Source: Macrostomum lignano (taxonomy: Eukaryota). Taken from it: 64,000 nt of DNA. The position numbers and the translations under genes are program-made. A model generated the notes under the pieces. The model made no database searches, was not told the DNA's origin, and was given only the letters and a program-made list of their open reading frames with translations. Location: contig NIVC01001048.1 of the NCBI GenBank assembly GCA_002269645.1, positions 104,462-168,461 on the forward strand, given 5' to 3'. Positions 22,817-48,044 of this stretch are shown here, in pieces. Position 1 is the first letter of the stretch. Every line of letters begins with the position of its first letter.

Positions 22817-22853
<37 letters not shown>

Positions 22854-25800: not shown

Positions 25801-28800
25801 AAACAAATAGTAATTTTCTAGATTAGCTAGTATCTTAATCTAATCTCGTCCTATAGATAAGCCACCAGTGTCTTGAATCTAATCTTGTCCTATAGATAAG
25901 CCACCAGTGTCTTGAATCTAATCTCATCCTGTAGTTTATTCAGTGACTTAATCTAATCTCATCCTGTAGATTATTCAGTGACTTAATCCAATCTCATTCT
26001 GTAGATTATTCAGTGACTTAATCTAATCTCATCCTGTAGATTATTTAGTGTCTTAGTCTAATCTCACCCTATATATTAGCCGAGTCTTAACCTAATCTCA
26101 ACCTTTAGATTAGCCGTGTCTTAATCTAATCTCACCCTATAGATTAACCAGTGTCTTAATATAATTTCACCCTATAGATTTGCAGTGATTTAACCTAATC
26201 TCACCCTATAGATTAGCCGTGTCTTAACCTAATTTCGCCCTATAGATTAGCCGTGTCTTAATCTTATCTTACCCTATTGATTAGTTTCATCTGAATCAGA
26301 ATCTCATCTCTAGATTAGCCTTATCTCTCAATGAGAATCTCATCTCTAGATTAGCGCCATCAATCAGAATCTTATTCTTAGAAATTAAAACCAATTTTGA
26401 AGCAATACCTGACGAAAAATTTCGCGATTCTTCTTCTGCCGAATATTCCGTCCCGAGGCCAAGTTTCTAAACATATCGTAGTTGACAATGAGCACCCCGC
26501 CATTGCGCAGGAAGCCTTGACAGTGTGCTAGTCGCATTTTATTATCCTTCACCGTGGCAATCTCTTGCACATCAACAATGTCATCCTCTGACGAGTCCTC
26601 AAGCCACATACGAAATTCGTTACGCCAATTAAGCACCGTATTCAACGGGCAGACAATCAGAGCGGAACGAACTTTCAGCTTATCCGGATACCGAAACAGC
26701 GTGTGCAAGAATGAAATGGTCGACAGAGTCTTGCCAAGCCCCATACAGTGAGCCAGAATACAGCCTGAGCCTTCCGGCTGTCGCTTGAACTGCTCCAGAC
26801 TTTCATAGAGACACTCGTACTGAAACTGCACCGCTTCAACCTGATGCGGCTTTAGTTTGGTGCAAATATTCGGACTGACTTCAATCACTGGCTCGCGTGT
26901 CTCCGGATTCCGTTCCAGCACCAGCTGTTTAGTGATGACAATCTGATTCGGGCCGCTATCATCTAGCACCTCTTGCACAATGTTCTCATTGTATTTCCGT
27001 TGCATTTCAGCGACTCGCCGTCTGCGATCTTTCTCAGCTAGTTCGGCTTCTTTAGTGACGCTGCTGAGTTTATTAACCTTCATAATGCGCTTGATATTGC
27101 GCCGTCCAGTTGCCTTGTCCTCGTCGTCCTCATCTTCTTCTTGGTCGCCGACGTCGGCAATTCGTTCGTCGTCGGAAGTTTTCTTCTTTTTCTTGCCGAT
27201 TTCAACAAAGTCCTCGTCGCTATCCTCTCTGTCGGCCGCTGATTTGTCCGTCTTGCGGCGCTTGCCAAAGCGGCCACCGCCTCCGCCGCCGCCACCGCGA
27301 CTTTTTCGAACTTCGCCATCATCCGAATCGGAATCGTCCAGCAAAACAACTCGCTTTCCTTGCTGTTGCTTCTTTTTATCGCTGTCTTTCTTGGAATTTT
27401 TGCTGTGCTTCTTTTTCCCGGAATCTTCACTGTCGGACATGCGGAAATCCGACACGGCCGAGTTCTCAGAGGCGTCGTCATCCACCGATGCCTCCTTGTC
27501 GTCAGCGTCATCATCACTGGCTTCGTTCGAAAAGTCCGAAGAGTCAAACAGCATGTTGTTTTTGCCTTTCTTCTTTTTCTTTTCGGCCTCTCGTTGCTTT
27601 TTCCTCAGTTTCTGTTGAGACGCGCGAATCTCGTCTTGCAGTCGATCAACCTCATCGTCAGACGAAGTGAACAGGCTCAGCTTCTCAGAGGAGGCGTCAC
27701 TGCCATCGTCGGATGACGCGACTTTACGACGATCGCGTTTGGAACGACGCTTGTCGCCATCGTCGCTGTCTTCAGTCTGCTTGTTCCTCTTGCGCTTCTT
27801 ACTGCGATCCGACTCTTTTAATTCATTCTTATCTCGCTTCTTTTTCTTAGTAGCTTTGTCATCATCATCATAATCTGAGTCGGCTTGCTCATCCGACTGG
27901 GACTTCTTCGATTGGCGCTTCTTTGAACCTCGCTTAGCAGCAGCCGAAACAAAATCATCGTCCGAGTTGTCCTCTTCGTCCAGCTCGTCGTCGCTGTCGC
28001 TAGATTTTGCTGATTTCTTCTTTTTAGTCTGCTGAGCAGCCTTCGATTTCGCTTGTCTCGGCTTGTTGCGCCGCTGTTCATTGGATGAACTGTCGTCATC
28101 TGATCGGTCATCATCCCCGTTAACTTTGCCACGGGTCTTTTTCTGCTGCTCAGGTGAAACTTTCTTCTTCGATTTATCTTTGGCAGTCTTTCGGCTAGGC
28201 CCATCAGACGAGCTATCAGAATCGCTTCCAGCGCTATCACCGCCCTTGCCTTTGTCTTTCTGAACAACGGATGGCTTTGTCTTAGCCAATCTAGGCTTAT
28301 TTCGTCGGCGACTTTCATTGTCTTCGTCGCTGTCATCGGCGCTGCCGACAGTTTCAACTTTTGCCGCAGTACGAGGCCTCAGGCGGCTTGACTCAGAGTT
28401 GGAAACCGCTGTGGAGGAGCTGGCCGGACCAACAGCAGCGCTTGATGTCTTATCAAACACTGGAGAGGCGCACTCGCTGCCGTTAGCAGTTTGCAGAACA
28501 TCGTCAGCCAATTCTGGCTCAGACGGTGTTCGGTCTTCTGCTTCAATTGCAGCTTCTGCTGGCTCAGCATCGGCTAGAGCCTCAGCCTCCGACTCAGAGC
28601 TAATTAGCACAGCAGGCTCAGCTATCTCATCTTCAATATCAGGTTCAGCCCGTTTCGAACTGGAAACTTTAGGCGTCTCTTTCATTCGACGACGCGAAGG
28701 CGGTTTCGACTGCACAGGGGTCTCTTTCTGCCGCTTCTCCTGCTCAGAATTATTTTCCAACTCAACGTCTTCATCTGCATCAGCAAAGTTTGAGCCGCTG

Positions 28801-29402
28801 CCAGTTGGATTAATACCTTCAATCACTTGATCGGCTAGTTCAAGCTCGCGCTCAATATCGCTTAGATGCGGCGACGATCTATCATGATTTAATTCTTCAT
28901 CATCACCAGCTTCTTCAATGTTGTCTTCATCATTATTATTCTCGTTTTCTACATCACTGTCGTCATCAGCACCATTGTGCATCTCTTCTTGATTGTCGTT
29001 ATCTTGATTAGCCTCCTCATCTGTCGTCGGCAGCTCATCCTCGTCCATGCCGTCGATGCTAGATTGACGTTCGGTACGTCGCATTTGCTTTTTCTTTATA
29101 CGACGTTGAAGAAAAACACTTTCCTCTGTTCCACCTGCATCTTCTGGCTTCTGTTCTAATTCTACACTGTCATCAACATTAATATCAGCCTCCATATTTT
29201 CCTCATCATCATCAGCATTACTGTCCAATTCTGATGCGATTTCGTCTTCATCACTGGCGGAAGAATCCGGAGCGGGTCGCTTCATAGAGCATCGACGCAG
29301 GTAGCTGGCGTGCTGAAGAGCCGCTTTAGCGGCCTCACTGTCGGCCTGGCTGATCACAACTGCCGGATAGCAGAAGTCGCTCAGCTTCCAGTCGAAATCC
29401 AT
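20790..29402 (-). CDS. ATRX: ATRX/XNP SNF2-family chromatin remodeller, 5 coding exons (29402-26409, 25697-25287, 24655-23896, 23211-22876, 21439-20790), about 1716 aa
   Basis: Long acidic/Lys-rich N-terminus; [12 protein letters not shown]; [16 protein letters not shown]; [13 protein letters not shown]; [15 protein letters not shown]; [10 protein letters not shown]; KLLVFSQSL; RLDGST; [15 protein letters not shown]; [33 protein letters not shown]; [10 protein letters not shown]; Q-rich tail. Intron phases 0,0,1,1 are consistent and the total of 5151 nt is divisible by 3. The true 5' end is uncertain. Confidence 0.93.
21510..22855. repeat. (GACA)n microsatellite filling the last ATRX intron
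   Basis: Directly visible. It explains the SVCL-repeat ORFs. Confidence 0.98.
22876..23211 (-). CDS. ATRX: ATRX exon (motif VI)
   Basis: Acceptor TCCCAG; [14 protein letters not shown]...LPKDGILA; donor G|GTGAGG. Confidence 0.92.
23896..24655 (-). CDS. ATRX: ATRX exon (acidic insert, helicase C-lobe)
   Basis: Acceptor CTCCAG; IKLYQTYL...ISTKAGGL; donor G|GTGAGT. Confidence 0.92.
24685..25115. repeat. 25-bp minisatellite, about 17 copies (GGCGATTCTCATTGGCTGGTGTAGG), in an ATRX intron
   Basis: Directly visible. Confidence 0.95.
25287..25697 (-). CDS. ATRX: ATRX exon (DEGH motif II, motif III)
   Basis: Acceptor ACCCAG; [16 protein letters not shown]...VRLSEVQ; donor CAG|GTAGGG. Confidence 0.92.
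25840..26380. repeat. Degenerate ~35-bp tandem repeat (TTAATCTAATCTCACCCTATAGATTAGCCGTGTC) in an ATRX intron
   Basis: Directly visible. It shares the TAATCTCACC core with the P450 intron-4 repeat. Confidence 0.85.
26409..29402 (-). CDS. ATRX: ATRX large exon (low-complexity region to helicase motifs I/Ia)
   Basis: ORF 26385-29405; donor CAG|GTATTG at 26408. Confidence 0.92.
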
Positions 29403-30454
29403 CAAGAATTCAAAATTAAATAATGACGACGTAGTAGCAATACAGTTATAACCACGTAAGAATACTAAACCTTACAGGCTCAAACAGATTTTGGAAACAT
29501 AGGGTAACCTGCTGGATTAACTACTAGGTGAAACTACGTACACCCGCTGACTATAAATACGTACCTCCATAGACTAAAATTCACCTATACTAATACACAA
29601 TGTGTTTAATACACGGGGTTTATTTTTATTTCTTAATGATTTCATTTGATTTAGAACATGACAAATTGGCGTGATCACTTTTTAATAATGAGTTGACACA
29701 TGAGTTGACACATCTCGGGACTTTAGGATGTGTGATCACGAACATTTTCTTTAATCGATTATGTTGTATTAATATAGCCTGTCCAGGATTGCTATGGGAG
29801 GTTGGACCATAGACAACGCAACTAAGCCACCACTAGCAAATGTTTTTAAATCCAATCGTGTCTTGAACTGAGGAACAGAAAAAAAGAGAACACAAATAAC
29901 TACTAAATCGTAAATGAAAGGAGAAAAAAGCTAAGAAGATTCAATGTGTATTGATTTTTTGGAAATTCTAATCTTTGTTAAAAAGGCTACAGCAAAAAAG
30001 TTAAAAAAACAAACAACAAATAATAGTAGAGGTTATGCACTGTATAAAATGTTGCAGTCTGAAAGCAATTTAATTAAACAGTGGGAAAGGCTACGCTTGA
30101 AGACAGACCTTTGTATTGAAAGTTCTATTGTAGTCTATTGTAAGTATAATAATCAGAGCGTTTTGTGTCATTAGTAATAAATAGCGTTTTGCATTACTGG
30201 TAATATTATTATAATAACGGTTTAAAAACCATCTGCATTCAACATGTAACTTGTAAGAATTCAATGGTAGGGCACTTTAACTGGCAGTCACAATCGAATA
30301 TTTTCATATCGATTATTTCAGTTAGTAAAATCTGGAGAACCATCAGTTAGAGATATCAGTAGAACCTAAAGACAAAAAAAGTAAATTAGTGGGATATCAG
30401 TAGAACTTATTAACTAAGAATCTTGGAGGGTGCTCAGTATACACTGTGAATCTG

Positions 30455-31267: not shown

Positions 31268-32284
31268 TTATTGGAAATTTATCAAAAAATCGCGGATTTT
31301 TTTATATGATAAAAAAACAAACTGTGATATATACACGTTGTTGTCTGTAGCAAAACAGGAATCAAATAAGGCATACTGATCCGTTTTACTATCACGCATA
31401 ACACAAACTGCATGTTCAGAATTATATATACCACAAATGAAACCGCAGACTTTATTAAAATCTATTTCCAGTAAATCGAGTTGTGTAATCGATTGAACTT
31501 CATCATAACGCAGGTAAAAATCTGGCCATAAAGTGCGGCCATGGTGAAAAATCGTGTTACTAAGATGAGATAATTTTAGCAAACTATTTTCTGGCAATTT
31601 TTCTTGAGATAGGCAATACTTATAAATACGTTCACCTAACTTTAAAACAAAATCAACATCTTCTTTGAATTTAAAGAAATCTAAACTTCCACCGAATCTG
31701 TAATGCAATAAAGCAGCAGCGGCAGACACTGCTAAGCACATTGGTTGACCCATTATTGCATTAGAAGATATAGTTTTCTCTATGAAATTGTTTGCTTCGA
31801 TAACATACTTTGGAACAATGAGCCTTCGAAATTCAGGGTGATCAAGCTCATGTATAAATAATTCGTCGAGACTTTCAAGCAATTTTGCATACTTGTCGGA
31901 TGCTGAAGACGGACGTGTTGCATCAATTTTTGCTTTGACGAGCTGGGAAAACTTAACAAGGGCATCAAACAAGCTTTCGGCAGACACTGCTAAGCACATT
32001 GGTTGACCCATTATTGCATTAGAAGATATAGTTTTCTCTATGAAATTGTTTGCTTCGATAACATACTTTGGAACAATGAGCCTTCGAAATTCAGGGTGAT
32101 CAAGCTCATGTATAAATACTTCGTAGAGACTTCTAAGCCATTCCGCATACTTTTCGGATTCTGGAAACGGACGTGTTGCATCAATTTTTGCTTTGATGAG
32201 GCAGGCCAACTTAAAACAAGCATAAAAAAAGCTTCCGTTGTTCAAAGAAATTTCATTTTCAATCTGGCCGGTATTGTCTGACAT
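31268..32284 (-). CDS. Hypothetical protein with an internal 86-aa duplication and a divergent herpes-tegument (peptidase C76)-like domain; catalytic His replaced by Cys (FDSC)
   Basis: Stop-free AT-rich ORF (open from 32368; likely ATG at 32284, MSDNTGQ). 258-bp direct duplication. The C-terminal half aligns by eye with the neighbouring gene: MCLAVSAAAALLH vs QCMAMSMAFIRLH; DVDFVLKLGERIYKYCLSQEKLPENSLL vs ILDVVLNIGHQLYETCIKANRLPNNQHL; HAVCVMRD..YALFDSC vs RAVAVTRD..LFLFDSH. Confidence 0.7.
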   Translation of the reverse strand: MSDNTGQIENEISLNNGSFFYACFKLACLIKAKIDATRPFPESEKYAEWLRSLYEVFIHELDHPEFRRLIVPKYVIEANNFIEKTISSNAIMGQPMCLAVSAESLFDALVKFSQLVKAKIDATRPSSASDKYAKLLESLDELFIHELDHPEFRRLIVPKYVIEANNFIEKTISSNAIMGQPMCLAVSAAAALLHYRFGGSLDFFKFKEDVDFVLKLGERIYKYCLSQEKLPENSLLKLSHLSNTIFHHGRTLWPDFYLRYDEVQSITQLDLLEIDFNKVCGFICGIYNSEHAVCVMRDSKTDQYALFDSCFATDNNVYISQFVFLSYKKIRDFLINFQ

Positions 32285-32404: not shown

Positions 32405-33868
32405 AGGGTATGGGAGGTTGTCAGAACCAGGGGGTATGGGAGGTTGTCAGAACCAGGGGGTATGGGAGGTTGTCAGAACCGGAGGGTATGGGAGGTTGTC
32501 AGAACCGGAGGGTATTGGAGGCATTGGAGGTTGTATATGGTTCATAATAAAACTTCAAAAAAGAATTTCATTGCGAGTGCTTGGAATCAATAACGATTTT
32601 TTATCCCAACCATACTTTGAAAGGGTGATAAAAATTAAAGATCTGAGAGGGTTTCACTAGAACCTGGGAATCTGAGAGGGTGTCCCTGAGAGGGTGTCGC
32701 TAGAACCTGCGGATCTGAGAGGGTGTCCCTAGAACATGGGGATCTGAGAGGGTTCGCTAGAACCTGCGGATCTGAGAGGGTGTCCCTAGAACATGGGGAT
32801 CTGAGAGGGTGTCCCTAGAACCTGGGGATCTGAGAGGGTGTCCCTAGAACCTGCGGATCTGAGAGGGTGTCCCTAGAACCTGGGATCTGAGAGGGTGTCC
32901 CTAGAACCTGGGATCTGAGAGGGTGTCCCTAGAACCTGGGATCTGAGAGGGTGTCCCTAGAACCTGGGGATCTGAGAGGGTGTCACTAGAACCTGGGATC
33001 TGAGAGGGTGTCCCTAGAACCTGGGATCTGAGAGGGTGTCCTAGAACCTGGGATCTGAGAGGGTGTCCCTAGAACCTGGGGATCTGAGAGGGTGTCCTAG
33101 AACCTGGGATCTGAGAGGGTGTCCCTAGAACCTGGGGATCTGAGAGGGTGTCACTGGAACCTGGGAATCTGAGAGGGTGTCCCTAGAACCCTGGGATCTG
33201 AGAGGGTGTCCCTAGAATCCTGGGATCTGAGAGGGTGTCCCTAGAACCCGGGGATCTGAGAGGGTGTCCCTAGAACCCTGGGATCTGAGAGGGTGTCCCT
33301 AGAACCCGAGGATCTGAGAGGGTGTCCCTAGAACCCGGGGATCTGAGAGGGTGTCCCTAGAACCCGGGGATCTGAGAGGGTGTCCCTAGAACCCGGGGAT
33401 CTGAGAGGGTGTCCCTAGAACCCTGGGATCTGAGAGGGTGTCCCTAGAACCCTGGGATCTGAGAGGGTGTCCCTAGAACCCTGGGATCTGAGAGGGTGTC
33501 CCTAGAACCCTGGGATCTGAGAGGGTGTCCCTAGAACCCTGGGATCTGAGAGGGTGTCCCTAGAACCCTGGGATCTGAGAGGGTGTCCCTAGAACCCTGG
33601 GATCTGAGAGGGTGTCCCTAGAACCCTGGGATCTGAGAGGGTGTCCCTAGAACCCTGGGATCTGAGAGGGTGTCCCTAGAACCCGGGGATCTGAGAGGGT
33701 GTCACTAGAACCCGGGGATCTGAGAGGGTGTCCCTAGAACCCGGGGATCTGAGAGGGTGTCACTAGAACCCGGGGATCTGAGAGGGTGTCACTAGAACCC
33801 GGGGATCTGAGAGGGTGTCCCTAGAACCCGGGGATCTGAGAGGGTGTCCCTAGAACCCGGGGATCTGT
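32405..33868. repeat. 28-29-bp minisatellite (GAACCCGGGGATCTGAGAGGGTGTCCCTA; main array 32640-33868, about 42 copies, plus a related block at 32405-32530)
   Basis: Directly visible. Same family as 30455-30810. Confidence 0.95.
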
Positions 33869-34752: not shown

Positions 34753-37700
34753 TCATTCGTCGCATTTATAAAAGTGCATTTCACATGGCCAGCCGTTTTG
34801 AAACATAACACACAGGTTCATAACCAGTTCGGCAATACTGGAGCATCTGAGAGCGTAGGCTGGATTGCTAGTGCTCGAATCGCCAGTAGCCTCAATTTGA
34901 TTATCAAGCAATGATGCAGCACCATCAAAAGAAGCTGGAAACTGATCGGAGCCATGCGAATCAAACAGAAACAGTTGACTGGAATCTACCCGATCTCGGG
35001 TCACAGCCACAGCTCTGCCGTGCATGATCAACAAGAAGCCATCGTAGCCGTTGGCAAATCCCCACTGTACACTCCTACCCGAGTCAATCCAGTTATGAGG
35101 ATTTGACTCGCCAACTACGGGATCAAATCTTGGCCAGCCTCCGTGTCGATCGAATGCCAGCATCCCATTCTGCAGCTCGTCAAAATTTAAATGTTGATTA
35201 TTTGGCAGCCTATTGGCTTTGATGCAAGTTTCATACAGTTGATGGCCAATATTCAAGACGACATCGAGAATAGATTTCGATAGCGAGCCGCTAAACGATC
35301 CCAGTAGCATATGATGCAGCCGGATAAAAGCCATAGACATTGCCATGCACTGCATTCCGGCCGCAGCGCCAAATAATGAGAAATCTGACTGGTTTCTGCT
35401 AGCCAATAGGGCTGCGCGTTGGACATAGCCTGTGAAATTTATCGTTGCCTTCTTAATTAATATTTCCTATGCTAGTCTCACACAGGTACGTTTCTATAGT
35501 TTGTGCGAGCAACTGCATTACTCTGCATGTCCTAAACTTGACCACTCCTAAACTTGACTACTCCTAAACTTGACTACTCCTAAACTTGACTACTCCTAAA
35601 CTTGACTACTCATAAACTTGACTACTCCTAAACTTGACTACTCATAAACTTGACTACTCATAAACTTGACTACTTCTAAACTTGACTACTCCTAAACTTG
35701 ACCACTCATAAACTTGACCACTCCTAAACTTGACTACTCCTAAACTTGACTACTTCTAAACTTGACTACTCCTAAACTTGACCACTCCTAAACTTGACAA
35801 ACCCTAAACTTAACCACTCCTAAACTTGACCACTCCTAAACTTGACTACTCCTAAACTTGACCACGCCTAAACTTACTACTTCTAAACTTGACTACTCCT
35901 AAACTTGACTACTTCTAAACTTGACTACTCCTAAACTTGACCACTCCTAAACTTGACCACTCCTAAACTTGACTACTCCTAAACTTGACTACTCATAAAC
36001 TTGACTACTCATAAACTTGACTACTCATAAACTTGACCACTCCTAAACTTGACCACTCCTAAACTTGACTACTCCTAAACTTGACCACTCCTAAACTTGA
36101 CCACTCCTAAACTTGACTACTCCTAAACTTGACTACTCATAAACTTGACCACGCCTAAACTTGACTACTTCTAAACTTGACTACTCATAAACTTGACCAC
36201 GCCTAAACTTGACTACTTCTAAACTTGACTACTCCTAAACGTGACTACTCCTAAGCTTGACTACTCCTAAACTTGACTACTCCTAAACTTGACTACTCCT
36301 AAACTTGACTACTCCTAAACTTGACTACTTCTAAACTTGACTACTCCTAAACTTGACTACTCCTAAACTTGACTACTCCTAAACTTGACCACTCCTAAAC
36401 TTGACTACTCCTAAACTTGACTACTCATAAACTTGACTACTCCTAAACTTGACTACTCATAAACTTGACCACTCCTAAACTTGACTACTCATAAACTTGA
36501 CCACTCCTAAACTTGACTACTCCTAAACTTGACCACTCCTAAACTTGACCACTCCTAAACTTGACCACTCCTAAACTTGACCACTCCTAAACTTGACTAC
36601 TCCTAAACTTGACTACTCATAAACTTGACCACGCCTAAACTTGACTACTTCTAAACTTGACTACTCCTAAACTTGACCACGCCTAAACTTGACTACTTCT
36701 AAACTTGACTACTCCTAAACGTGACTACTCCTAAACTTGACTACTCCTAAACTTGACTACTCCTAAACTTGACTACTCCTAAACTTGACTACTCCTAAAC
36801 TTGACTACTCCTAAACTTGACTACTCCTAAACTTGACTACTCCTAAACTTGACTACTCCTAAACTTGACCACTCCTAAAAAATTGACCACTCCTAAAAAC
36901 TTGACTACTTCTAAACTTGACCACTCCTAAAAACTTGACTACTCCTAAACTTGACCACTCCTAAAAAATTGACCACTCCTAAAAACTTGACTACTCCTAA
37001 ACTTGACCACTCTTAAACTTGACTCTCCTAAACTTGACTCCTAAACACTTGGCAACTTTTTGAGGGTTTCACTCAATCACTAAATTTCACATTATGAAAA
37101 TTTTAGCAACTTACCTGGCTCAGCCTCTTCCTGACTAATTTGTGTTTGAAACTGAACACGAGGCCACCCGGGATTAGCAAACTGGCACGCGTCAGGCAGA
37201 ATTTCTGGCGGAAGACTGACAACGCGAGAGTGCGCTAGAGCCCTGCTAACAGCGTCAGTGGTCATCTTCAACAACAGGCCATTGTAGGCACTATCTTCTC
37301 TACTCCGTAGATAACAATGAAAATCCATCAGAAACTGCATCCGTGTCCAAACAAACGGTCCCGAATTCCAACGCACCTGGAACAGCGGATCTCTATTCGA
37401 ACTAATACTAGCCCGATTGACCAATTGACTGCTCCAAGCTGCACTGGGAGTGGACAAGAAATCAAGCAGACAGTCGCGAGCAAACTGATGAAATTGGTGC
37501 GAGCACTGGCACGGATCAACTAGCTTCATCAGTTGCACAACAGTATTGCTTGGATTCTCAAGAATTTTACAAATCAGCTTGCAAACTTGCGACTTTGAAA
37601 CGTTAGAAATGGTAATTGATTCTCTCTCATTGTCATTAACCAACTCCATAGAGAAGCGACCAGCTGGCTGGCCAGGGTCATCTGTAACCAGGACAGCAGC

Positions 37701-38010
37701 GGTCGGAGGGTACATCATTGTACACAGCGTAGACATTAGGCTTTCAACACACTCCGGAAGAGCAAGACAGCCCAGTCTATTAAGATCCGCCTCTGAATAA
37801 TGTGGCCGCTGTCTTATGCTTCGGAGGACATAGACCTAAAATTTTTTAGCAATGCAGAAAAATAATGCAAGTTATCATTGCCTCAATTCTTTATTAGAAT
37901 TAACTCCCTCAACTCACATTAATAATTTGTGCAGAAGTAATTAGAAAATACAAATGATGGATGCCACCAAAAGAATTCTCTGCAACATTGTTATCATTTT
38001 CTTCATCCAT
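34753..38010 (-). CDS. 3-exon gene (38010-37918, 37835-37115, 35429-34753), 496 aa: unknown N-terminal domain + C-terminal herpesvirus-tegument-type (peptidase C76-like) deubiquitinase domain
   Basis: AAACA-ATG start; donors AAT|GTGAGT and G|GTAAGT; acceptors TTTTTAG and TTCACAG; phases 0 and 1 match; 1491 nt = 497 codons with no internal stop. Motifs SRNQSDF...AGMQCMAMS (Gln and catalytic Cys) and GFLLIMHGRAVAV...LFLFDSH (Asp/His) match my recollection of the UL36/BPLF1-type DUB signature. Confidence 0.78.
35530..37045. repeat. 16-bp minisatellite, about 94 copies (TAAACTTGACTACTCC), filling intron 2 of the DUB-like gene
   Basis: Directly visible. Confidence 0.97.
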
Positions 38011-38343
38011 TGTTTAATTGTTGCTATTGCTAATTTTTGTAGTCAAGTAGCAATAACTGTAGGGCTTGTGGCATGAATTGGTAATTGTATAAAAATGAGA
38101 TTAAATTATATAAAATTTTATATAATTCATTACAAAATTATTTTTAAAGATTTTACTTTAATATTGTTTACTTACAATAGAATAAGTCAAGCAAAATTAC
38201 TATAGTCTAATCATTTATGCCTGTAAAAAAAGATTATTGATAAAGTGATACCTTAAAAATGTAATAAAAACCTAGTTTTGCATAGAAAGATTGATATGCA
38301 TAATAACTTTCTAACAAAACTCAAAGCACTAAATATTTAGATT

Positions 38344-38607
38344 CAGGGGCGTAGCGAGGGGGGTATTGGTATATCGGCCGATACCCCCAAATTTCCAAAG
38401 CAACATTTTTTTCCTTTTTTCAGTTGCAATTGTGACCGTTATGGAAGAGAAAGGTATCCAAATCGAAAGAATAACAATTAACAAACAAATAGAGTATTTA
38501 TATGTATTATGCACTAGAAATACATTAAGGGGATATGTGGATCTCAAGCCCTTGCTTTCTGATAACAGCTAACCGATACCTCAAAAAAAATCCTGGCTAT
38601 GCCCCTG
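38344..38607. mobile_element. hAT-family MITE, 264 bp
   Basis: 8-bp TSD TTTAGATT (38336-38343 and 38608-38615). TIRs CAGGGGCGTAGC and CAGGGGCATAGC (reverse complement). The right end TCCTGGCTATGCCCCTG is nearly identical to that of the 10421-14250 element. Confidence 0.93.
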
Positions 38608-39009
38608 TTTAGATTAGGCCCTAATAGCAAAGTCCTAATTAATAATAAGACAAAATGAAATAATGAAAAATTAAATATAAAATTTAAAATAATATAAAGC
38701 TAGTTGCAATATTTAACAACTTGCTTTACAATGCCAGCATACTAAAACAATATTTTAAATCATTTAAAAAACGAAAATAATATTTATAAATTGTATTTTT
38801 CAGGTTGATATTTATTTTTTTACGTAATACCTGTTGGAAAAGTTATGCACTTGTGTAGGCATAAAATGTGAGCAAGGTGCACAAAAGAGGCACTTTAGTG
38901 GCCTATTTTTTCATGTTTTTTTAGCTAGTTAAAAGGACATTCCAGAGTCAGTTAGATTTATCTCAACAAGATAGAGCACCAGCACACTAATTAAGGGTTG
39001 CATAGGAAT

Positions 39010-39270
39010 GGCTGGAGCAGAACATTAACTTGCAAAGTTGCACTAGCCGCCATTGTTGCCAGATCTATTGCTGCTTGAATCTAGTGTGAAGGCACACATT
39101 AAGAGCAAGGCCTATTCTGTCTGCCATAGCAACATTGAGTCATCAAAGGCTGCTATGATAGAAGAGTGGAATGCTGTGTCACTAGCCTATATCCGCAACA
39201 CTTGCAGAACTTTCCAAAGATGCCTTCAGAGAGCCATTGAAGCTTGAGGTAGCTACTTTGAGTAATATTA
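39010..39270 (+). mobile_element. Tc1/mariner-superfamily transposase relic (C-terminal fragment)
   Basis: Translates as PP..PDL...HSNIESSKAAMIEEWNAVSLAYIRNTCRTFQRCLQRAIEA*GSYFE*, the typical Tc1-like C-terminus (WPPxSPDL...LKxAIxxEW...RLxAVIxAxGGYFE). Degenerate, with stops. Confidence 0.65.
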
Positions 39271-39518
39271 ACTACTGCAAGTCATGAACACATGCAAAAG
39301 GTTTTAGTAGCCAAAAATATATAATTTGAATAATAATACTTTTTATGTTGCTTCTAATTTACTGAAAATACTATTGCAATACCCAGACTTTATTAAAGAT
39401 CCTAATGATTTGCCAATATGTATATAGAAAGTAAATTTTAGTAAAAAAAGGTTATTTGCAAATGAATAGCTTTATAATGCAGTGAAATAAAATAAAAGCA
39501 AACAAGTATTAAAAAGAA

Positions 39519-41392
39519 TCTTTCTTCTAATCCTCACATAATACTAAAAGTGGTGCGTTGTTTGTTTGTTTGTATGTTGTAAGTGAACTCCTACAATTCT
39601 GCCAAGTCAGCGTCGAAACTTATATGGGAAAACTGCAAATTTTCCGGATCAGGCTTTAGGCTATTTTAATTTTTAATTTTCACATTTTAACATCCCTAAA
39701 AAAGCAGAAAACTGCTTTTTTAACCCCCAATAACCTTCTTTGGCCACTCTGCCTGGGGCTGCAGCCAGTTTGTAAAAATAGCCACCCCAACCTCCGCCCG
39801 CGGGCCGCTGTGTATTGAGGGGTGGTGGGTGCGCGTGTTCTGGGTTCAATGCAAATAAAACCCCCCGCGTGTTGGGGGGCTGAGTTAAATTTAATGCTTT
39901 ACCCAGAACGGGGGTTGGGCTTGGGCTGAGTGTACATAGCAGTTGTACAGTGTGAATAGATAGACTGTGTCGAGATTCAATTGGTTTTATTATTGGCGCC
40001 TTTTTTCCATAGGCAGCCCTGTGTATTAGTTTGGCGTGAAATTCAATGAATAAACTTGCGAACTTCTCTAGCAACTTAGCAAGCAGTCGGGAAATTGGTG
40101 AATTTCAAACGCTAACTGTTCCTCGAGTTTTAAACTTTGAGAGGAGAGACTTATATTGCTAGAAAGATCTTGCAACGCTGAGTTCGGGGATATAAGTTGT
40201 TTGCTTTAAATATGAAAAGAAAAAGCACAGCATTTAAAAAACTATTTCCATACTTTTAACTTTCTGCAAAAATTGTACTCAGTTTTGCGAGACGTAATAG
40301 ATAAAGTTGGGCGTATTGGAAGGGTGTCTGCCGCTGCATATTGGAGGGTTGATTTAGATTGCGCAACCGTTTATTTAACTTTAAATAAGACTGATACTGT
40401 CTGACTGAGAAATGGTTTGCGCAATTAATTGATTCAATTGATTCAACACGCAGCTCTGTGCAGCTCTAACCCTAACCCTAACCAATGAATTCTGAGAGTT
40501 AAGTTCTTTTTGACAGAAAATTTCGATTGAGTCCAGTTTCACGGAGTATTCTGATGGTTTTCGGTTTCACGGAGAGGATTTCTTTTTCGTGGAGAGAATT
40601 TAGATGTATTTCTGTTTTACGGAGACGATTTTGATGGATGTCAGTTTCACTCAGAGGATTTCCATGGAGCCCAGTTTCACGGAGAGGATTTCTGTTTCGC
40701 GGAGAGGATTTCTGTTTCGCGGAGAGGATTTCTGTTTCACGGAGGGATTTTGATGGATTTGGTATCTTCAGTCAGTCAGTAAAGAGAGTAAAGAGAAGAG
40801 TGAAAAGAGAAGAGAGAAGAGATTATAGAAAAGAGAGTAGAGATGAGAGAGGACAGATTAGACATGACAGATGGGAGAGAAGAGGGGAGTAAGGCGGGAA
40901 CGAAGAGGGAGAGAGAAGAAAAGAGGAGAGAGGAGATGAGAGGGAAGATATGAGATAGCAGAGGGAGACAGGAGAGATGAGAGGGGAGAGAAGAGAGGAG
41001 CTGAGAGTAGAGGAGAAAGAAATAGTGAGATGAGGCATGAGGGATGAGAGATGAGAGAGGAGAGAAGAGAGGAGAAAACAGGGGATAAAGGAGACAGGAG
41101 AGAAAGCCGAAAGACGAGGGAGAAGAGATAAATAAGGTGGTAGAGATGAGAGACGTGAGAGGAGAGAGAAGAGAAGAGAGGAGACAGAAGAATCTGAGTC
41201 TGGACAATGGCAGTCAGTTTTTGCGAACAGGGAAAACAAGATATGGTATTTGAAAGGCTTTACAGAGGATTTGGAGATGATTTGGAAGATGGGATTCAAG
41301 TCAGCTGGAATTTCAGCTGATGGATTTCAGGGAATGGAATTCCGGTGATGGGAGTTCTTCCCCTTTCTCCTCCGAAGGAGGAGTTCCACTCG
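39519..41392 (+). mobile_element. Putative non-autonomous Helitron, unit 0 (divergent member)
   Basis: Starts A|TC...ATAATACTAAAAG followed by a (TTTG)n microsatellite. Shares the GATTTAGATTGCG...GATACTG.CTGACTGAGAAAT block with units 1-3. Ends with hairpin CTCCTCC-GAA-GGAGGAG (41367-41383) and CTCG instead of CTAG. Confidence 0.5.
40770..41200. repeat. AG-rich low-complexity tract
   Basis: Directly visible; produces the Leu/Ser-rich minus-strand ORFs. Confidence 0.9.
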
Positions 41393-41984
41393 TATATACT
41401 AAAAATGAAAATCTTGCTTGCTTGCTTGCTTGTAATCGATTAGAGAAAAAATGGCTTAACCGATTTTCATGAGACTTGCACTGTTCGATCAGAAATTTTC
41501 CCGTGACGGTACATGTGTCTTGGCTAAGAAATTGCTCGATGCTAAAGGCATTAAATACTCGCAAAGGTCAAGCAAACTTTTCGACTTGAAATGCATTGTA
41601 AGAATGCTAGAAAAAAATTGACTGGTTGAATTCTGATTCTAAAATAGATTGCATCATAACTGAATTGTGACTCCGACTTGAATTGCGTCACAGTATTGAA
41701 AATGCAGTGTGGAAGCGAAACACCAGACGTGATTTAGATTGCGTAACCATATTGTTAACTGATACTGACTGACTGAGAAATTGATTATGTCATAACTGCC
41801 TCGTGTGATTTACTCTATGCTTGGAGTTTTGAAACTTATAATTATAAGTGCTAAAATTCATATTATCAAAACGATGAGAGCTAGCCTAGAGGTAAACAGA
41901 CTGACTGCTAAATGCAGGGACGATGGTTCGAATTTTTAGAGAGTGGAATTTTTTTAATTAAAGCTTTTTAACACCAAAAAGAAA

Positions 41985-43560
41985 ACTAAAAAATCATAGA
42001 AGCGTCATGTAAAAAATCATAGAAGCGTCATGTAAAAAATCATAGAAGCGTCATGTAAAAAATCATAGAAGCGTCATGTAAAAAATCATAGAAGCGTCAT
42101 GTAAAAAATCATAAAAGCGTCATGTAAAAAATCATGGAAGCGTCATGAAAAAATCATAGGAGCGTCATGAAAAAATCATAGAAGCATCATGTAAAAATCA
42201 TAGAAGCGTCCTGCAGAAATCGTAGAAGCATCATGTAAAAATCATAGAAGCGTCATGTAAACAATCATAGAAGCGTCATGTAAAAAATCATAGAAGCGTC
42301 ATGTAAAAAATTGTGGAAGCGTCATGAAAAAATCATAGAAGCGTCATGTAAAAAATCATAGAAGCGTCATGAAAATATCATAGAAGCGTCATGTAAAAAA
42401 TCATAGAAGCGTCATGCAAAAAATCATAGAAGTGCCATGTAAAAAATCATGGAAGCGTCATGTAAAAATCATAGAAGCGTCATGAAAAAATCATGGAAGC
42501 GTCATGTAAAAAATCATGGAAGCGTCATGAAAAAAAATCATGGAAGCGTCATGTAAAAATCATAGAAGTGTCATGTAAAAAATCATGGAAGCGTCATGTA
42601 AAAAATCATAGAAGCGTCATGTAAAAAATCATGGAAGCGTCATGCAAAAATCATAGTAGCGTCATGTAAAAAATCATAGAAGCGTCATGAAAAAATCATA
42701 GAAGCGTCATGAAAAAAACATAGGAGCGTCCTGAAAAAATCATAGAAGCGTCATGTAAAAATCATAGAAGCGTCATGTAAACAATCATAGAAGCGTCCTG
42801 CAGATATCGTAGAAGCGTCATGAAATAATCATAGAAGCGTCATGTAAAAAGCATAGAAGCGTCATGTAAAAAATCATGGAAGCGTCATGTAAAAAATCAT
42901 AGAAGCGTCATGTAAAAAATCATGGAAGCGTCATGTAAAAATCATAGTAGCGTCATGTAAAAAATCATAGAAGCGTCATGAAAAAATCATAGAAACGTCA
43001 TGTAAAAATCATAGAAGCGTCATGTAAAAATCATAGAATCGTCATATAAAAAGCATAGAAGCGTCATGTAAACAATCATAGAAGCGTCATATAAAAAGCA
43101 TAGAAGCGTCATATAAACAATCACAGAAGCGTCATGAAAAAATCATGGAAGCGTCATGTATAAATCATAGAAGCGTCATGTAAAAAATCATGGAAGCGTC
43201 ATATAAAAAGCATAGAAGCGTCATATAAACAATCACAGAAGCGTCATGAAAAAATCATGGAAGCATCATGTAAAAATCATAGAAGTGTCATGTACGGTAA
43301 AAAATCATGGAAGCGTCATGTAAAAAGCATAGAAGCGTCATGTAAAAAGCATAGAAGCGTCATGTAAACAATCATAGAAGCGTCATGAAAAAATCATAGG
43401 AGCGTCATGAAAAAATCATAGAAGCATCATGTAAAAATCATAGAAGCATCCTGCAGAAATCGTAGAAGCATCATGTAAACAATCATAGAAGCGTCATGTA
43501 AACAATCATCGAAGCGTCATGAAAAAATCATAGAAGCCTCATTTAAAAACTAATGAAAGC
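41985..43560. repeat. ~22-bp minisatellite (AAAAATCATAGAAGCGTCATGT) inside Helitron unit 1
   Basis: Directly visible. Confidence 0.96.
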
Positions 43561-44217
43561 ATCATTTAAAAAATTAAGAAGCATCATGGAAGAATAAAAG
43601 AAGTGTAATGTAAAAATCAAAAGAAGCGTCATGTCAGACATGAAGGATGTCATGTAAAAATGAAATGCAGCTATAATGCTGTGCTGGGAAGAAAAACTGA
43701 GACGTAAAGGCTCTCAGAGAATAACTGAGATTACGAGGGGGGGGGTTGTTTCTGGGATCTCAAAGCAAAAGTCAGAAGCTACTTCAAAGTTCATGGAATC
43801 ACTAAAATGTCAAGGCTTAGGGGAGAAGAATTGCTGAGATTTCAAGGCTTTAGGTTGGGTTAAAGTTAGGTTTAGGTCAGGTGTGGGTTGAGGGTTATAT
43901 TTTATCGGGTTTCAAGGTTAACAGTGGATTTTTTAGATTTCAAGGTTTATGGGGGCCATCGCTGACATGTCAAAGCTTACGGACGGGGGGAATAGCTGAG
44001 ATGTCAAGGCTCACGGGGGTATAAATGAGATTTCAAGGCTAAAGTCAGAAGCTACATGTAGTTTATTGAAAACTTTTTATTACATTATTTGATGCCTCCT
44101 CAGGCGAGGGATCGCTGATAAAAAAAGCGTTATGTAAAAAATAAAAGAAGCTTATCGCTATAATGCTGTAGTAGTGCTATAATGACTCTTAGAGAGAATT
44201 ACTGAAATTTCAATGCT

Positions 44218-44256
44218 TTAGGGTTAGGTTAGGGTTAGGGTTAGGGTTAGGGTTAG
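44218..44256 (+). repeat. Interstitial telomeric repeat (TTAGGG)n, about 6 copies
   Basis: Directly visible inside Helitron unit 1. Confidence 0.95.
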
Positions 44257-45094
44257 AAGGTTGACAGATATTTTTAGATTTCCAAGGCTTATTGGGGGCA
44301 TTGCTGAGATGTCAAGGGGGGAAGTTGATATGTTAAAGCTTGTGGGGGGGGGGAATTACTGACATGTCAAGGCTTACAAGGTTTGACAGGAGATTTTTTA
44401 AGATTTCAAGGATACATGTAGCTTATTAAAAAAACGTGTATAGCATTTCTTTGGCTCCCCAACGGGGGGCGTAGATTGCTAGTCCTATATACTAAAAATG
44501 GTCTGTCTGTGTCTATGTGATCAATTAGAGAAAAAATGGCTGGACCGATTTTGTTCGAACTTGCACTGTTCGATCAGAAATTTTCCCGTGACTGTACATG
44601 CATCGTGGCTAAGAAATTGCTCGATGCTAAAGGCATTAAATATTCGAAAAACATGCTTTTTTGCAAAGGTCAAGCAAACTTTTCGACTTGAAATGCATTG
44701 TAAGAATGCTAGAGAAAAAACTGACTGGTTGAATTCTGATTCTGAAATAGATTGCATCATAACTGAATTGTAACTCCGACTTGAATTGAAAATGCAGTGT
44801 GGAAGCGTAGCACCAGACTTGATTTAAATTGCGTAACCATGCATATTGTTAACTGATACTGACTGACTGAGAAACTGATTATGTCATAACTGCTTCGTGT
44901 AATTTACTCTATGCTTGGATTTTCAAGTGTTGAATTATATAAGTGCAAAATTTGATGTTATCAAAACGATGAGAGCTAGCCTAGAGGTGAACAAACTGAA
45001 CTGCTAAATGCAGCGACAATGGTTCGAATTTTCATAGAGTATAATTTTTTTAATTAAAGCTTTTCAACGTCAGGAAAACTAAAAGACTTTTTAA

Positions 45095-46175
45095 AAAGAA
45101 GCGTCATGTAAAAATCATAGAAGCGTCATATAAAAAATCATAGTAGCGTTATATAAAAATCATAGATGCGTCATTTAAAAAATCATAGAAGCGTCATGTA
45201 AAAATCATAGAAGCGTCATTTAAAAATCATAGAAGCGTCATTTAAGAATCATAGAAGCGCCATGTAAAAAATCATAGAAGCGTCATGTAAAAATCATAGA
45301 AGCGTCATTTAAAAAATCAGAGAAGCATCATGTAAAAAATCAGAGAAGCGTCATGTAAAATAACATAGAAGCGTCATGTAAACCATCATAGAAGCGTCAT
45401 GTAAACAATCATAGAAGCGTCATGTAAAAAATCATAGAAGCGTCATGTTAACAATCATAGAAGCGTCATGTAAACAATCATAGAAGCGTCATGTAAACAA
45501 TCATAGAAGCGTCATGTAAAAAATCATAGAAATGCCATGTAAAAAATCATAGAAGCGTCATGTAAAAAATCATAGAAGCGTCATGTAAAAAATTGTAGAA
45601 GCGTCATATAAAAATCATAGAAGTGTCATGTAAAAATCGTAGAAGCATCATATAACAATCATAGAAGCGTCATTTAAAAAATCATAGAAGCGTCATGTAA
45701 ACAATCATAGAAGCGTCATGTAAAAATCATAGAAGTGTCATTTAAAAAATCATAGGAGCGTCATGTAAACAATCATAGAAGCGTCATTTAAAAAATCATG
45801 GAAGCGTCATGTAAAAAAATCGTAGAAGCGTCATGTAAAATATCATAGAAGCGTCATGTAAACAATCATAGAAGCGTCATGTAAAAATCATAGAAGCGTC
45901 ATGTAAAAAATCATAGAAGCGTCATGTAAAAAAATCATAGAAGCATCATGTAAAAAATCAGAGAAGCGTCATGTAAACAATCATAGAAGCGTCATATAAA
46001 AATCATAGAAGCGTCATGTAAACAATCATAGAAGCGTCATGTAAACAATCATAGAAGCGTCATGTAAAAAATCATAGAAGCGTCATGTAAAAAATCATAG
46101 AAGCGTCATGTAAAAAATCAGATAAGCGTCATGTAAACAATCATAGAAGCGTCATGTAAACAATCATAGAAGCCT
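45095..46175. repeat. Same ~22-bp minisatellite inside Helitron unit 2
   Basis: Directly visible. Confidence 0.96.
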
Positions 46176-48040: not shown

Positions 48041-48044
48041 ACTT

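What the first reader, a model, noticed from the sequence alone, without database searches (positions are those of the whole stretch)
34753..38010. Stand-alone, intron-containing animal gene encoding a herpesvirus-tegument-type deubiquitinase fused to an unknown N-terminal domain
Seen in sequence: three exons with canonical splice sites join into a stop-free 496-aa ORF. Its last exon carries SRNQ..AGMQC and LFLFDSH. Established: peptidase C76 (HSV UL36, EBV BPLF1, MCMV M48) is a viral Ub/NEDD8 deconjugase with a Q...QC start and an FD(P/S)H motif. As I recall, its eukaryotic homologues mostly occur inside large transposon (Helitron-type) polyproteins, not as host genes. Inference: this is a domesticated viral/transposon DUB with a new ~270-aa N-terminal module, i.e. 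a host DUB class outside the usual USP/UCH/OTU/MJD/JAMM/MINDY/ZUP set.
Basis: partly seen in the sequence, partly recalled or inferred. Interest (0 to 1): 0.82.

Follow-up and report, generated by a model that had tools for sequence, protein, structure and literature searches.

The report
Flatworm host gene for tegument-like deubiquitinase
This is a real, spliced gene of the flatworm Macrostomum lignano whose C-terminal half belongs to the VTD (peptidase C76) family of deubiquitinases, first known from herpesviruses and described across eukaryotes in 2022; it is a new member of a known class, and only its N-terminal half is unexplained.

Summary
Three minus-strand exons (38010-37918, 37835-37115, 35429-34753) with GT/AG borders join into a stop-free 496-aa ORF. 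This ORF is identical to GenBank PAA72996.1 (Macrostomum lignano BOX15_Mlig028667g1; UniRef "Peptidase C76 domain-containing protein"), a model derived from RNA-seq transcripts.

Residues ~280-496 are a VTD/C76 domain:
- Pfam PF04843 scores 40.9 bits (cut-off 25).
- Gln285, Cys299 and Asp428-x-His430 are in place.
- The AlphaFold model (pLDDT 76) has only VTD structures as significant PDB matches (8ADD E 3e-8; M48 2J7Q E 2e-6).

It is not transposon cargo. No Rep/helicase or endonuclease lies within 18 kb upstream. Only two copies exist, in collinear duplicated blocks that share introns, a minisatellite and the neighbouring SNF2 gene. Between the copies there are no indels in 1491 coding nt, and dN/dS is 0.42.

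Erven et al. 2022 already described this host deubiquitinase class, including domesticated stand-alone genes. What is new is modest:
- a flatworm member;
- a ~270-aa N-terminal region with no detectable relative;
- a tandem second VTD-like gene that lacks two catalytic positions.

Catalytic activity and biological role are inferred, not shown.

The parts
34753..38010 (-). Whole coding span of the gene (ATG to stop), equal to GenBank BOX15_Mlig028667g1
37918..38010 (-). Exon 1 (codons 1-31), followed by a GTGAGT donor
   Evidence: 96.8% identical and ungapped in the second copy.
37836..37917 (-). Intron 1 (82 nt, phase 0, GT..AG)
   Evidence: One mismatch in 82 nt between the two copies.
37115..37835 (-). 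Exon 2 (721 nt). Together with exon 1 it encodes the ~270-aa N-terminal region of unknown kind.
   Evidence: No hit in Pfam, PDB or 1.84 billion protein representatives. No likeness to the VTD profile.
35430..37114 (-). Intron 2 (1685 nt, phase 1, GTAAGT..CACAG)
   Evidence: Splice sites are identical in the second copy.
35530..37039 (.). 16-bp minisatellite (about 94 copies) that fills most of intron 2
   Evidence: Also present in the intron of the second copy.
34753..35429 (-). Exon 3 (codons 272-496 plus stop). It encodes the whole VTD / peptidase C76 domain.
34939..35400 (-). Stretch matched by Pfam PF04843 (residues 282-435 against profile positions 1-164 of 183)
   Evidence: One search shows the one-piece match in the second copy.
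35389..35391 (-). Codon of Gln285, which aligns with the conserved Gln upstream of the catalytic Cys (presumed oxyanion-hole residue)
   Evidence: Alignments.
35347..35349 (-). Codon of Cys299, the predicted catalytic nucleophile
   Evidence: Invariant column. Aligned with the Cys of solved VTDs.
34954..34962 (-). Codons of Asp428-Ser429-His430, the Asp-x-His motif that defines VTDs
   Evidence: Motif definition from PMC9741609.
34740..34745 (-). AATAAA about 10 nt after the stop codon; a likely poly(A) signal (inferred from sequence only)
35169..35169 (-). First base of an alternative exon 3, using an AG inside exon 3. That model (UniRef A0A1I8H3Y3, 286 aa) changes frame and lacks the VTD domain.
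31268..32278 (-). Neighbouring second VTD-like gene (GenBank model, 5'-partial, 336 aa). It is a distant paralogue with two of four catalytic positions not conserved and an internal 258-bp tandem duplication (31720-32200).

Best explanation
This is a host gene of Macrostomum lignano encoding a two-part protein. An N-terminal region of ~270 aa has no recognisable family. The C-terminal domain of ~215 aa belongs to the VTD family (viral tegument-like deubiquitinases, MEROPS/Pfam peptidase C76).

By analogy with characterised VTDs, the domain most likely acts as a papain-fold cysteine isopeptidase. Cys299 would be the nucleophile. Asp428-x-His430 would supply the unusual 'flipped' acid/base pair from one strand. 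Gln285 would help form the oxyanion hole. The likely reaction is removal of ubiquitin (or a close ubiquitin-like modifier) from substrates. The N-terminal region would act as a targeting or regulatory part.

The domain most likely entered the lineage from a Helitron-type (Helentron) transposon and was kept as an ordinary intron-containing gene. It now sits in a tandem pair with a second VTD-like gene, and the whole block was copied by the recent genome duplication of this species.

Shown: gene structure, family membership by sequence, motifs and predicted fold, non-transposon context, two syntenic copies, and conservation of frame. Inferred: enzymatic activity, substrate, role of the N-terminal region, and transposon origin.
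For: Gene model:
- The exons join into 496 aa, identical to PAA72996.1.
- The GenBank annotation of this assembly was built only from RNA-seq-derived transcripts, and transcripts overlapping repeat annotation were removed (PMC5730564).

Family membership:
- PF04843 at E 2.2e-10, 40.9 bits against a cut-off of 25. The second copy matches in one piece over profile positions 1-164 of 183.
- A profile of the domain plus its nearest relatives hits the zebrafish Helitron VTD 8ADD at E 1.6e-16 over its full length, and a herpesviral tegument protein (6PPB) at E 0.009.
- A profile of Macrostomum sequences alone hits M48 (2J7Q) at E 0.01.
- The Gln, Cys and Asp-x-His positions align.
- The AlphaFold model of residues 272-496 has pLDDT 76 and pTM 0.81. 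All six significant PDB matches are VTD structures: 8ADD E 3.3e-8 (TM 0.65/0.69), 8ADC, 8ADB and 2J7Q. There are 25 significant viral matches, at least 22 named as herpesviral large tegument proteins or their orthologues and three without a name in the tables at hand, including the top one.

Not transposon cargo:
- No Rep/helicase or endonuclease domain among ORFs of 120 aa or more in the 64-kb window.
- None in the non-repetitive stop-free stretches of 60 aa or more (36 of 56) in the 18 kb upstream.
- No further copy in the window.
- Only two proteins at 90% identity or above among 15 billion, and no 50-90% relatives.
- The two loci are collinear over gene, introns, minisatellite, a second VTD-like gene slot and the SNF2 gene.

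Constraint between the two copies:
- 39 substitutions and 0 indels in 1491 coding nt, against 10 indel events in about 1200 nt of upstream flank and 13 in 435 nt downstream.
- dN/dS is 0.42 (binomial p about 0.006-0.015), similar to 0.37 for the neighbouring SNF2 exon.
- Splice sites and all four catalytic positions are kept in both copies.

Origin:
- The only relatives found by exhaustive search are P0004 (32% identity) and Haliotis rubra XP_046544285 (33%).
- P0004 matches the Helitron VTD 8ADD at E 4e-19.
Against: - No activity, substrate or expression pattern is known. I found no mention of the gene in three Macrostomum expression papers' supplements or in full-text search.
- Constraint is moderate, not strong. 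Divergence is a mosaic: 16 of 36 changed codons fall in codons 365-425, where non-synonymous to synonymous counts are 11:5. The unique intron parts are nearly identical between copies. Gene conversion may therefore blur the dN/dS reading.
- No orthologue outside M. lignano was detected, so long-term retention is unproven.
- The N-terminal half alone shows no significant excess of synonymous change (6 synonymous against 10 non-synonymous).
- A direct single-sequence match to solved VTDs is weak (E 0.18-0.9).
- The link to Helitron VTDs runs through two intermediate sequences.
Confidence: 0.72

Rival explanations
1. It is a transcribed but functionless leftover. A transposon-derived VTD fragment happens to be spliced to unrelated upstream sequence, and it still looks intact only because the two copies separated recently.
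For: - No orthologue or relative of the N-terminal half was found anywhere.
- Divergence between the copies is small (dS about 0.05), so there has been little time for decay.
- Codons 365-425 change almost neutrally (11 non-synonymous: 5 synonymous).
- An alternative model lacks the peptidase domain.
- The neighbouring VTD-like gene has lost two catalytic positions and carries an internal duplication.
Against: - There are zero indels in 1491 coding nt, against roughly one per 30-120 nt in the flanks.
- Overall dN/dS is 0.42 with p about 0.01, comparable to the adjacent SNF2 gene.
- All catalytic positions and all four splice sites are kept in both copies.
- Transcript-based annotation passed a repeat filter.
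Confidence: 0.15
2. It is cargo of a Helitron-type (Helentron) transposon: part of, or carried by, a mobile element rather than a host gene.
For: - Most non-viral VTD domains lie in Helentron open reading frames (PMC9741609; PMC11417382).
- The nearest sequence relatives resemble the zebrafish Helitron VTD.
Against: - No Rep, helicase or AP-endonuclease domain was found in the window's long ORFs, or in the non-repetitive stop-free stretches of 60 aa or more (36 of 56) in the 18 kb upstream.
- On the other side lie a second VTD-like gene and a cellular SNF2 gene.
- Only two copies exist, and they sit in collinear duplicated chromosome blocks.
- The gene has spliceosomal introns, one of which holds an old minisatellite shared by both copies.
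Confidence: 0.03
3. It is a fragment of an endogenised herpes-like virus, that is, a viral rather than transposon acquisition.
For: - The Pfam family is built on herpesviral proteins.
- A profile of Macrostomum sequences alone finds the cytomegalovirus M48 domain before the Helitron one.
- At least 22 of the 25 significant structural matches among viral proteins are named herpesviral large tegument proteins or their orthologues.
Against: - No other viral-type gene lies nearby.
- In viruses the domain is the extreme N-terminus of a protein of more than 2000 aa; here it is the C-terminus of a 496-aa protein.
- The best sequence relatives and the best structural match are the non-viral, Helitron-type VTDs.
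- According to PMC9741609, VTDs occur only in herpesviruses of mammals, birds and reptiles-type hosts and are thought to have been taken from transposons.
Confidence: 0.03
4. The domain is an active cysteine peptidase, but its real substrate is not ubiquitin. It could be another ubiquitin-like modifier or a specific protein.
For: - PDB names the herpesviral tegument chains that match this protein 'Large tegument protein deneddylase'.
- VTDs are thought to descend from non-DUB YopT-like proteases, and linkage preference varies widely within the family (PMC9741609).
- This protein has a ~25-residue low-confidence insertion right after the Asp-x-His motif.
- The stretch that diverges fastest between the two copies is codons 365-425.
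Against: All VTDs characterised so far cleave ubiquitin (PMC9741609). The overall fold and catalytic positions match them.
Confidence: 0.12

Closest known systems
Helentron-encoded VTD domains (e.g. zebrafish DrT1-VTD2, PDB 8ADD; Erven et al. 2022, PMC9741609)
   Same: - Same family by profile: 8ADD at E 1.6e-16 with the domain-plus-relatives profile.
- Best structural match: E 3.3e-8, TM 0.65-0.69.
- Same Cys and Asp-x-His arrangement.
   Different: - It is not in a Rep/helicase/endonuclease polyprotein and not multi-copy.
- It has spliceosomal introns and a fixed chromosomal position.
- It is fused to an unrelated 270-aa N-terminal region.
- The sequence is very divergent: the single sequence does not reach 8ADD on its own.
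Herpesviral large tegument protein N-terminal deubiquitinase/deneddylase (Pfam PF04843; murine cytomegalovirus M48, PDB 2J7Q)
   Same: - The Pfam family match is above the curated cut-off.
- The Gln, Cys and Asp-x-His positions align.
- The predicted fold matches 2J7Q at E 2e-6, and at least 22 of the 25 significant viral matches are named herpesviral large tegument proteins or their orthologues.
   Different: - Here the domain is the C-terminal end of a small cellular protein, not the N-terminal end of a capsid-bound protein of more than 2000 aa.
- Identity in the structural alignments is only about 13-19%.
- There is no viral gene context.
Domesticated stand-alone VTD genes of invertebrates (Drosophila ms(3)76Ca, five C. 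elegans genes) and inactive insect iVTD proteins (PMC9741609)
   Same: - Host genes outside any transposon that keep the catalytic residues, which is the same evolutionary situation.
- The window's neighbouring VTD-like gene, with two catalytic positions lost, parallels the inactive insect iVTDs.
   Different: - Those genes encode little beyond a single VTD domain and are conserved across insects or nematodes with male-germline expression.
- Here there is an extra N-terminal half, no detected orthologues and no expression data.
- No sequence link to those particular genes was tested.
Haliotis rubra LOC124254487 (XP_046544285.1) and an unnamed metagenome protein (P0004)
   Same: - These are the only relatives found by exhaustive search: 32-33% identity over about 155 residues of the domain.
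- The abalone gene also has introns and no transposon domain called within 10 kb.
   Different: Their N-terminal parts are unrelated to this protein's. Similarity is confined to the VTD domain.

Membership tests
VTD / peptidase C76 (Pfam PF04843 Herpes_teg_N) | Match to the family profile above the curated gathering score | tested here: met
   40.9 bits against a cut-off of 25, E 2.2e-10. The second copy scores 40.6 bits, covering profile positions 1-164 of 183.
VTD / peptidase C76 (Pfam PF04843 Herpes_teg_N) | Catalytic Cys near the start of the domain, preceded by a conserved Gln | tested here: met
   Cys299 is an invariant column. Gln285 and Cys299 align with the corresponding residues of solved tegument and Helitron VTDs.
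VTD / peptidase C76 (Pfam PF04843 Herpes_teg_N) | Invariant Asp-x-His motif supplying the rest of the triad (PMC9741609) | tested here: met
   Asp428-Ser-His430 aligns with the motif of 8ADD and of a herpesviral tegument protein. The motif definition was read.
VTD / peptidase C76 (Pfam PF04843 Herpes_teg_N) | Papain-like fold that superposes on solved VTD structures | tested here: met
   Tested on a predicted model only (pLDDT 76, pTM 0.81). All six significant PDB matches are VTDs: 8ADD, 8ADC, 8ADB, 2J7Q.
VTD / peptidase C76 (Pfam PF04843 Herpes_teg_N) | Cleaves ubiquitin (or NEDD8) conjugates | not testable with these tools
   Inferred from family membership only.
Helentron (Helitron-type) transposon-borne VTD | VTD lies in or next to a Rep/helicase (and AP-endonuclease) reading frame | tested here: not met
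   No such domain was found in the window's ORFs of 120 aa or more, in the non-repetitive stop-free stretches of 60 aa or more (36 of 56) in 38011-56000, or among called genes of either locus.
Helentron (Helitron-type) transposon-borne VTD | Several to many near-identical dispersed copies | tested here: not met
   Two copies at 90% protein identity or above, none at 50-90%. Both lie in collinear duplicated blocks. Caveat: this counts annotated proteins only, not a whole-genome DNA census.
Herpesviral large tegument protein | VTD at the N-terminus of a very large (>2000 aa) tegument protein within a viral genome | tested here: not met
   The protein has 496 aa with the domain at its C-terminus. 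Its neighbours are cellular genes.
Domesticated stand-alone invertebrate VTD genes (ms(3)76Ca type) | Host gene outside transposons, catalytic residues kept, conserved across a taxon, male-germline expression | tested here: inconclusive
   Host-gene context and catalytic residues are met. No orthologue was detected in other species. No expression data were found.

The most novel reading that the evidence does not exclude
The ~270-aa N-terminal region is a new, flatworm-specific targeting domain. The tandem pair (a catalytically complete VTD plus a neighbour that lacks two catalytic positions, with a different paralogue in the same slot of the duplicated block) is a fast-turning-over enzyme/pseudo-enzyme module. 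It could act, for example, in germline or stem-cell conflict with mobile elements, as speculated for male-germline VTDs in flies and nematodes.
Probability: 0.12. Interest if true: 0.5.

Novelty: new member of a known kind. Interest (0 to 1): 0.3.

Why it matters
It adds Platyhelminthes to the patchy host range of VTD deubiquitinases; Erven et al. 2022 do not mention flatworms in the text or the held supplements. It gives one more apparently independent case of a transposon-type VTD kept as an ordinary host gene, here with an unknown N-terminal half and a degenerate tandem partner. Macrostomum lignano is a tractable regeneration and germline model, so the gene is a convenient place to ask what host VTDs do. 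It does not open a new enzyme class, because that was done in 2022.

Tried and rejected
- **Word-index protein searches.** I searched with the whole protein, with a five-sequence domain alignment and with the abalone domain. They returned only the query's own cluster or sequences already in hand.
- **Full-length AlphaFold model.** With six sequences it reached pLDDT 42.9, and its Foldseek search gave nothing significant; the top match was UfSP2 at E 0.12. The N-terminal half therefore remains without a fold. Only the domain-alone model was usable.
- **N-terminal half as a degenerate second VTD.** Rejected: hhalign probability 0.1.
- **N-terminal Cys/His-rich stretch as a RING-variant finger.** Rejected: Pfam RINGv at E 0.22, 12 bits against a cut-off of 21.6.
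- **N-terminal half against PDB and PHROGs.** Nothing found.
- **Expression evidence.** A full-text search for the three gene identifiers and searches of three papers' supplements gave no hit.
- **Pfam scan by DNA reference.** I replaced it with a scan of the non-repetitive stop-free stretches joined by X spacers.
- **The two neighbour genes as duplicates of each other.** Rejected: 26% protein identity and no DNA similarity.
Full report
**1. The observation**

The feature lies on the minus strand.
- Exon 1 is 38010-37918: ATG, 93 nt, then a GTGAGT donor.
- Exon 2 is 37835-37115: TTTTAG acceptor, 721 nt, then a GTAAGT donor.
- Exon 3 is 35429-34753: CACAG acceptor, ending in TGA.

Joined as they stand, the exons give a 496-codon frame without a stop. 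Intron 1 has 82 nt (phase 0). Intron 2 has 1685 nt (phase 1) and is almost filled by a 16-bp minisatellite of about 94 copies at 35530-37039. An AATAAA lies about 10 nt after the stop.

**2. Identity of the sequence**

The 496-aa product is identical over its whole length to GenBank PAA72996.1, 'hypothetical protein BOX15_Mlig028667g1' of the free-living flatworm Macrostomum lignano. UniRef names it 'Peptidase C76 domain-containing protein'. The annotated gene span on contig NIVC01001048.1 is the same 3258 nt.

The paper describing this assembly states two things (PMC5730564):
- The GenBank annotation was made only from a genome-guided transcriptome (StringTie/TACO on RNA-seq plus a de novo assembly).

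The splice model therefore rests on assembled transcripts, although I could not inspect reads myself. A second public model (UniRef A0A1I8H3Y3, 286 aa) uses an AG inside exon 3, so that the exon starts at 35169. It shifts frame and lacks the peptidase domain.

**3. The C-terminal half is a VTD / peptidase C76 domain**

*Sequence evidence.*
- Pfam PF04843 matches at 40.9 bits against a curated cut-off of 25 (E 2.2e-10). In the second genomic copy the match is one piece, residues 282-435 against profile positions 1-164 of 183.
- The single sequence against PDB gives only weak hits to two cytomegalovirus tegument proteins, E 0.18-0.9, over the Cys-box region.
- A profile of the domain with its four nearest relatives hits PDB 8ADD, the zebrafish Helitron DrT1-VTD2, at E 1.6e-16 over 205 of 213 residues. 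It hits a herpesviral tegument protein at E 0.009.
- A profile of Macrostomum sequences alone reaches M48 (2J7Q) at E 0.01.

*Catalytic positions.* In these alignments Gln285, Cys299 and Asp428-x-His430 fall on the catalytic positions. Erven et al. 2022 give the Asp-x-His motif as the invariant hallmark of the family (PMC9741609).

*Predicted fold.*
- An AlphaFold model of residues 272-496 reached pLDDT 76 and pTM 0.81.
- All six of its significant PDB matches are VTD structures: 8ADD at E 3.3e-8 (TM 0.65/0.69), 8ADC, 8ADB and 2J7Q.
- Among viral predicted structures there are 25 significant matches. At least 22 are named herpesviral large tegument proteins or their orthologues; three, including the top one, have no name in the tables at hand.
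- A ~25-residue insertion directly after Asp-x-His is modelled with low confidence.

**4. The N-terminal half is unexplained**

Residues 1-271 (exons 1-2) have no significant match in several searches:
- Pfam: the only listing is RINGv at E 0.22, well below its cut-off.
- PDB.
- An exhaustive HMMER scan of 1.84 billion representative proteins, where every hit outside the query's own cluster covered only residues 286-446.

It is not a degenerate second VTD (hhalign probability 0.1). The full-length AlphaFold model was too poor (pLDDT 42.9) to assign a fold. Its coding status rests on the open frame, the transcript-based model and the absence of indels between the two copies. Its own synonymous/non-synonymous counts (6 against 10) are too small to show constraint.

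**5. Host gene or transposon cargo?**

That test fails on each count.

*No transposon domains nearby.*
- The window's ORFs of 120 aa or more contain no Rep, helicase or endonuclease other than a cellular SNF2-family gene at about 22.7-29.4 kb.
- The non-repetitive stop-free stretches of 60 aa or more (36 of 56; the 20 low-complexity ones were left out) in the 18 kb upstream (38011-56000) have no Pfam match at all.
- tblastn finds no further copy in the window.

*Only two copies, in duplicated blocks.*
- Among about 15 billion proteins there are just two full-length copies at 90% identity or above. The second is PAA89825.1 (BOX15_Mlig014290g1) on NIVC01000137.1. There are none at 50-90%.
- The two loci are collinear at 91-97% DNA identity through the upstream flank, both introns, the minisatellite and the SNF2 gene.
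- This matches the recent genome duplication and the extra large chromosomes of the sequenced line (PMC5730564; abstract of PMC12896417).

*Divergence between the copies.*
- The coding sequence has 39 substitutions and no indel in 1491 nt.
- By contrast, the upstream flank has 10 indel events in about 1200 nt and the downstream flank 13 in 435 nt.
- Nei-Gojobori dN/dS is 0.42 (dS 0.049; binomial p about 0.006-0.015). That is close to the 0.37 of the adjacent SNF2 exon.
- Splice sites and all four catalytic positions are kept in both copies.

*Caveats.*
- Divergence is a mosaic. 16 of 36 changed codons lie in codons 365-425 (11 non-synonymous, 5 synonymous), while the unique intron parts are almost identical. 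Gene conversion may have acted.
- The copy count relies on annotated proteins, not on a DNA census.

**6. A small local family**

About 2.4 kb downstream on the same strand lies a second annotated gene (31268-32278, 5'-partial model of 336 aa).
- Its C-terminal part is 29% identical to the VTD half (pairwise E 1e-8).
- It keeps the Cys but not two of the other catalytic positions.
- It contains an in-frame 258-bp tandem duplication that doubles the Cys box.
- This resembles the inactive 'iVTD' proteins of insects.

In the duplicated block the same slot holds a different paralogue, PAA89824.1 (313 aa, partial).
- It keeps all four catalytic positions.
- It is only 26% identical to the window's neighbour, with no DNA similarity.
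- The two neighbours are therefore not simple duplicates of each other. Differential loss from a larger ancestral cluster is the simplest reading, but this is inference.

**7. Origin**

The only relatives found by the exhaustive search are two proteins:
- an unnamed metagenome protein, P0004 (32% identity);
- an abalone protein, Haliotis rubra XP_046544285 (33% identity).

P0004 matches the Helitron VTD 8ADD at E 4e-19 and the abalone protein matches it at E 2e-4. The abalone gene is itself intron-containing, with no transposon domain called nearby.

Two published results point the same way. Most non-viral VTDs sit in Helentron reading frames (PMC9741609; PMC11417382). VTDs were repeatedly 'domesticated'. 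Together with these, a transposon origin followed by retention as a host gene is the most economical account. It is inferred, not shown.

**8. How it most likely works**

By homology to characterised VTDs, the C-terminal domain is probably a cysteine isopeptidase that removes ubiquitin. Cys299 would be the nucleophile, and Asp428/His430 would form the 'flipped' dyad described for M48 and DrT1-VTD2. Viral and Helitron VTDs prefer K48, K63 and K11 chains. Which linkage or modifier this enzyme prefers cannot be read from the sequence. The N-terminal half would then direct or regulate the enzyme. I put about 0.85 on 'VTD-family host gene' and about 0.6 on 'active deubiquitinase'.

**9. Comparison with what is known, and novelty**

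That class is what Erven, Abraham, Hermanns, Baumann and Hofmann published in 2022 as the VTD family. Their paper includes:
- crystal structures;
- stand-alone host genes in insects (ms(3)76Ca) and nematodes;
- fusions to other regions in cnidarians and fungi.

Databases already label this very protein as C76-containing. What is not in that paper's text or held supplements is any flatworm member. The N-terminal region has no relatives. The finding is therefore a new member of a known kind, real and correctly read, but ordinary in class. Interest is about 0.3.

Noticed in passing
window 31268-32278 (-), with the tandem duplication at 31720-32200; L001 15133-16074: A second VTD-like gene lies directly downstream. 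It lacks two of the four catalytic positions and has an in-frame 258-bp duplication that doubles its Cys box. In the duplicated chromosome block the same slot holds a different paralogue (26% identity, catalytic positions complete) with no DNA similarity.
   Followed up: partly
window 35430-35529, 37040-37114, 37836-37917 compared with L001: The unique intron sequence is almost identical between the two gene copies (1 mismatch and 1 indel in 259 nt). The exons differ at 2.6% and the upstream flank at 4-6%. 16 of 36 changed codons cluster in codons 365-425. This is mosaic divergence, possibly from gene conversion.
   Followed up: partly
window 35169 (-): An alternative public gene model (UniRef A0A1I8H3Y3, 286 aa) uses an AG inside exon 3. 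It changes frame and ends after 15 residues, giving a product without the peptidase domain.
   Followed up: partly
whole window, e.g. 270-1098, 7719-10020, 14250-14843, 16182-18353, 21515-22853, 32686-33867, 41987-43634, 45097-46224, 49182-50209: The window is unusually dense in long minisatellite arrays (units of 8-46 bp, 20-170 copies) in introns and between genes. This fits the reported 15% tandem-repeat content of this genome.
   Followed up: no
window 47104-47165: A short interstitial run of the telomere-type hexamer TTAGGG (about 10.7 copies).
   Followed up: no
window 11410-13622 (+): A remnant of a hAT-type transposase-like gene (Pfam DUF4371 at E 3e-16). Its reading frame is spread over at least four separate ORFs, so it is broken several times. 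I did not count the breaks further.
   Followed up: no
window 22700-29405 (-): A cellular SNF2-family helicase gene (SNF2-related domain; the called product is about 1700 aa with Helicase_C) flanks the VTD pair in both duplicated blocks. For its large exon, dN/dS between the copies is 0.37.
   Followed up: partly
window 41316-41567, 44524-44823, 47462-47704: An ORF-like unit of about 250 bp recurs three times at roughly 3-kb spacing, separated by 22/23-bp arrays. This is a higher-order repeat with no Pfam match.
   Followed up: no
window 60333-61088 (-): An ORF with a C-type lectin domain (just above the Pfam cut-off) and a weak PAN domain match (below the cut-off).
   Followed up: no
window 56076-59085: A GC-rich block (53-55% GC against 30-40% around it) with several overlapping ORFs of 130-310 aa. 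The two I scanned have no Pfam match. The nature of the block is unknown.
   Followed up: no
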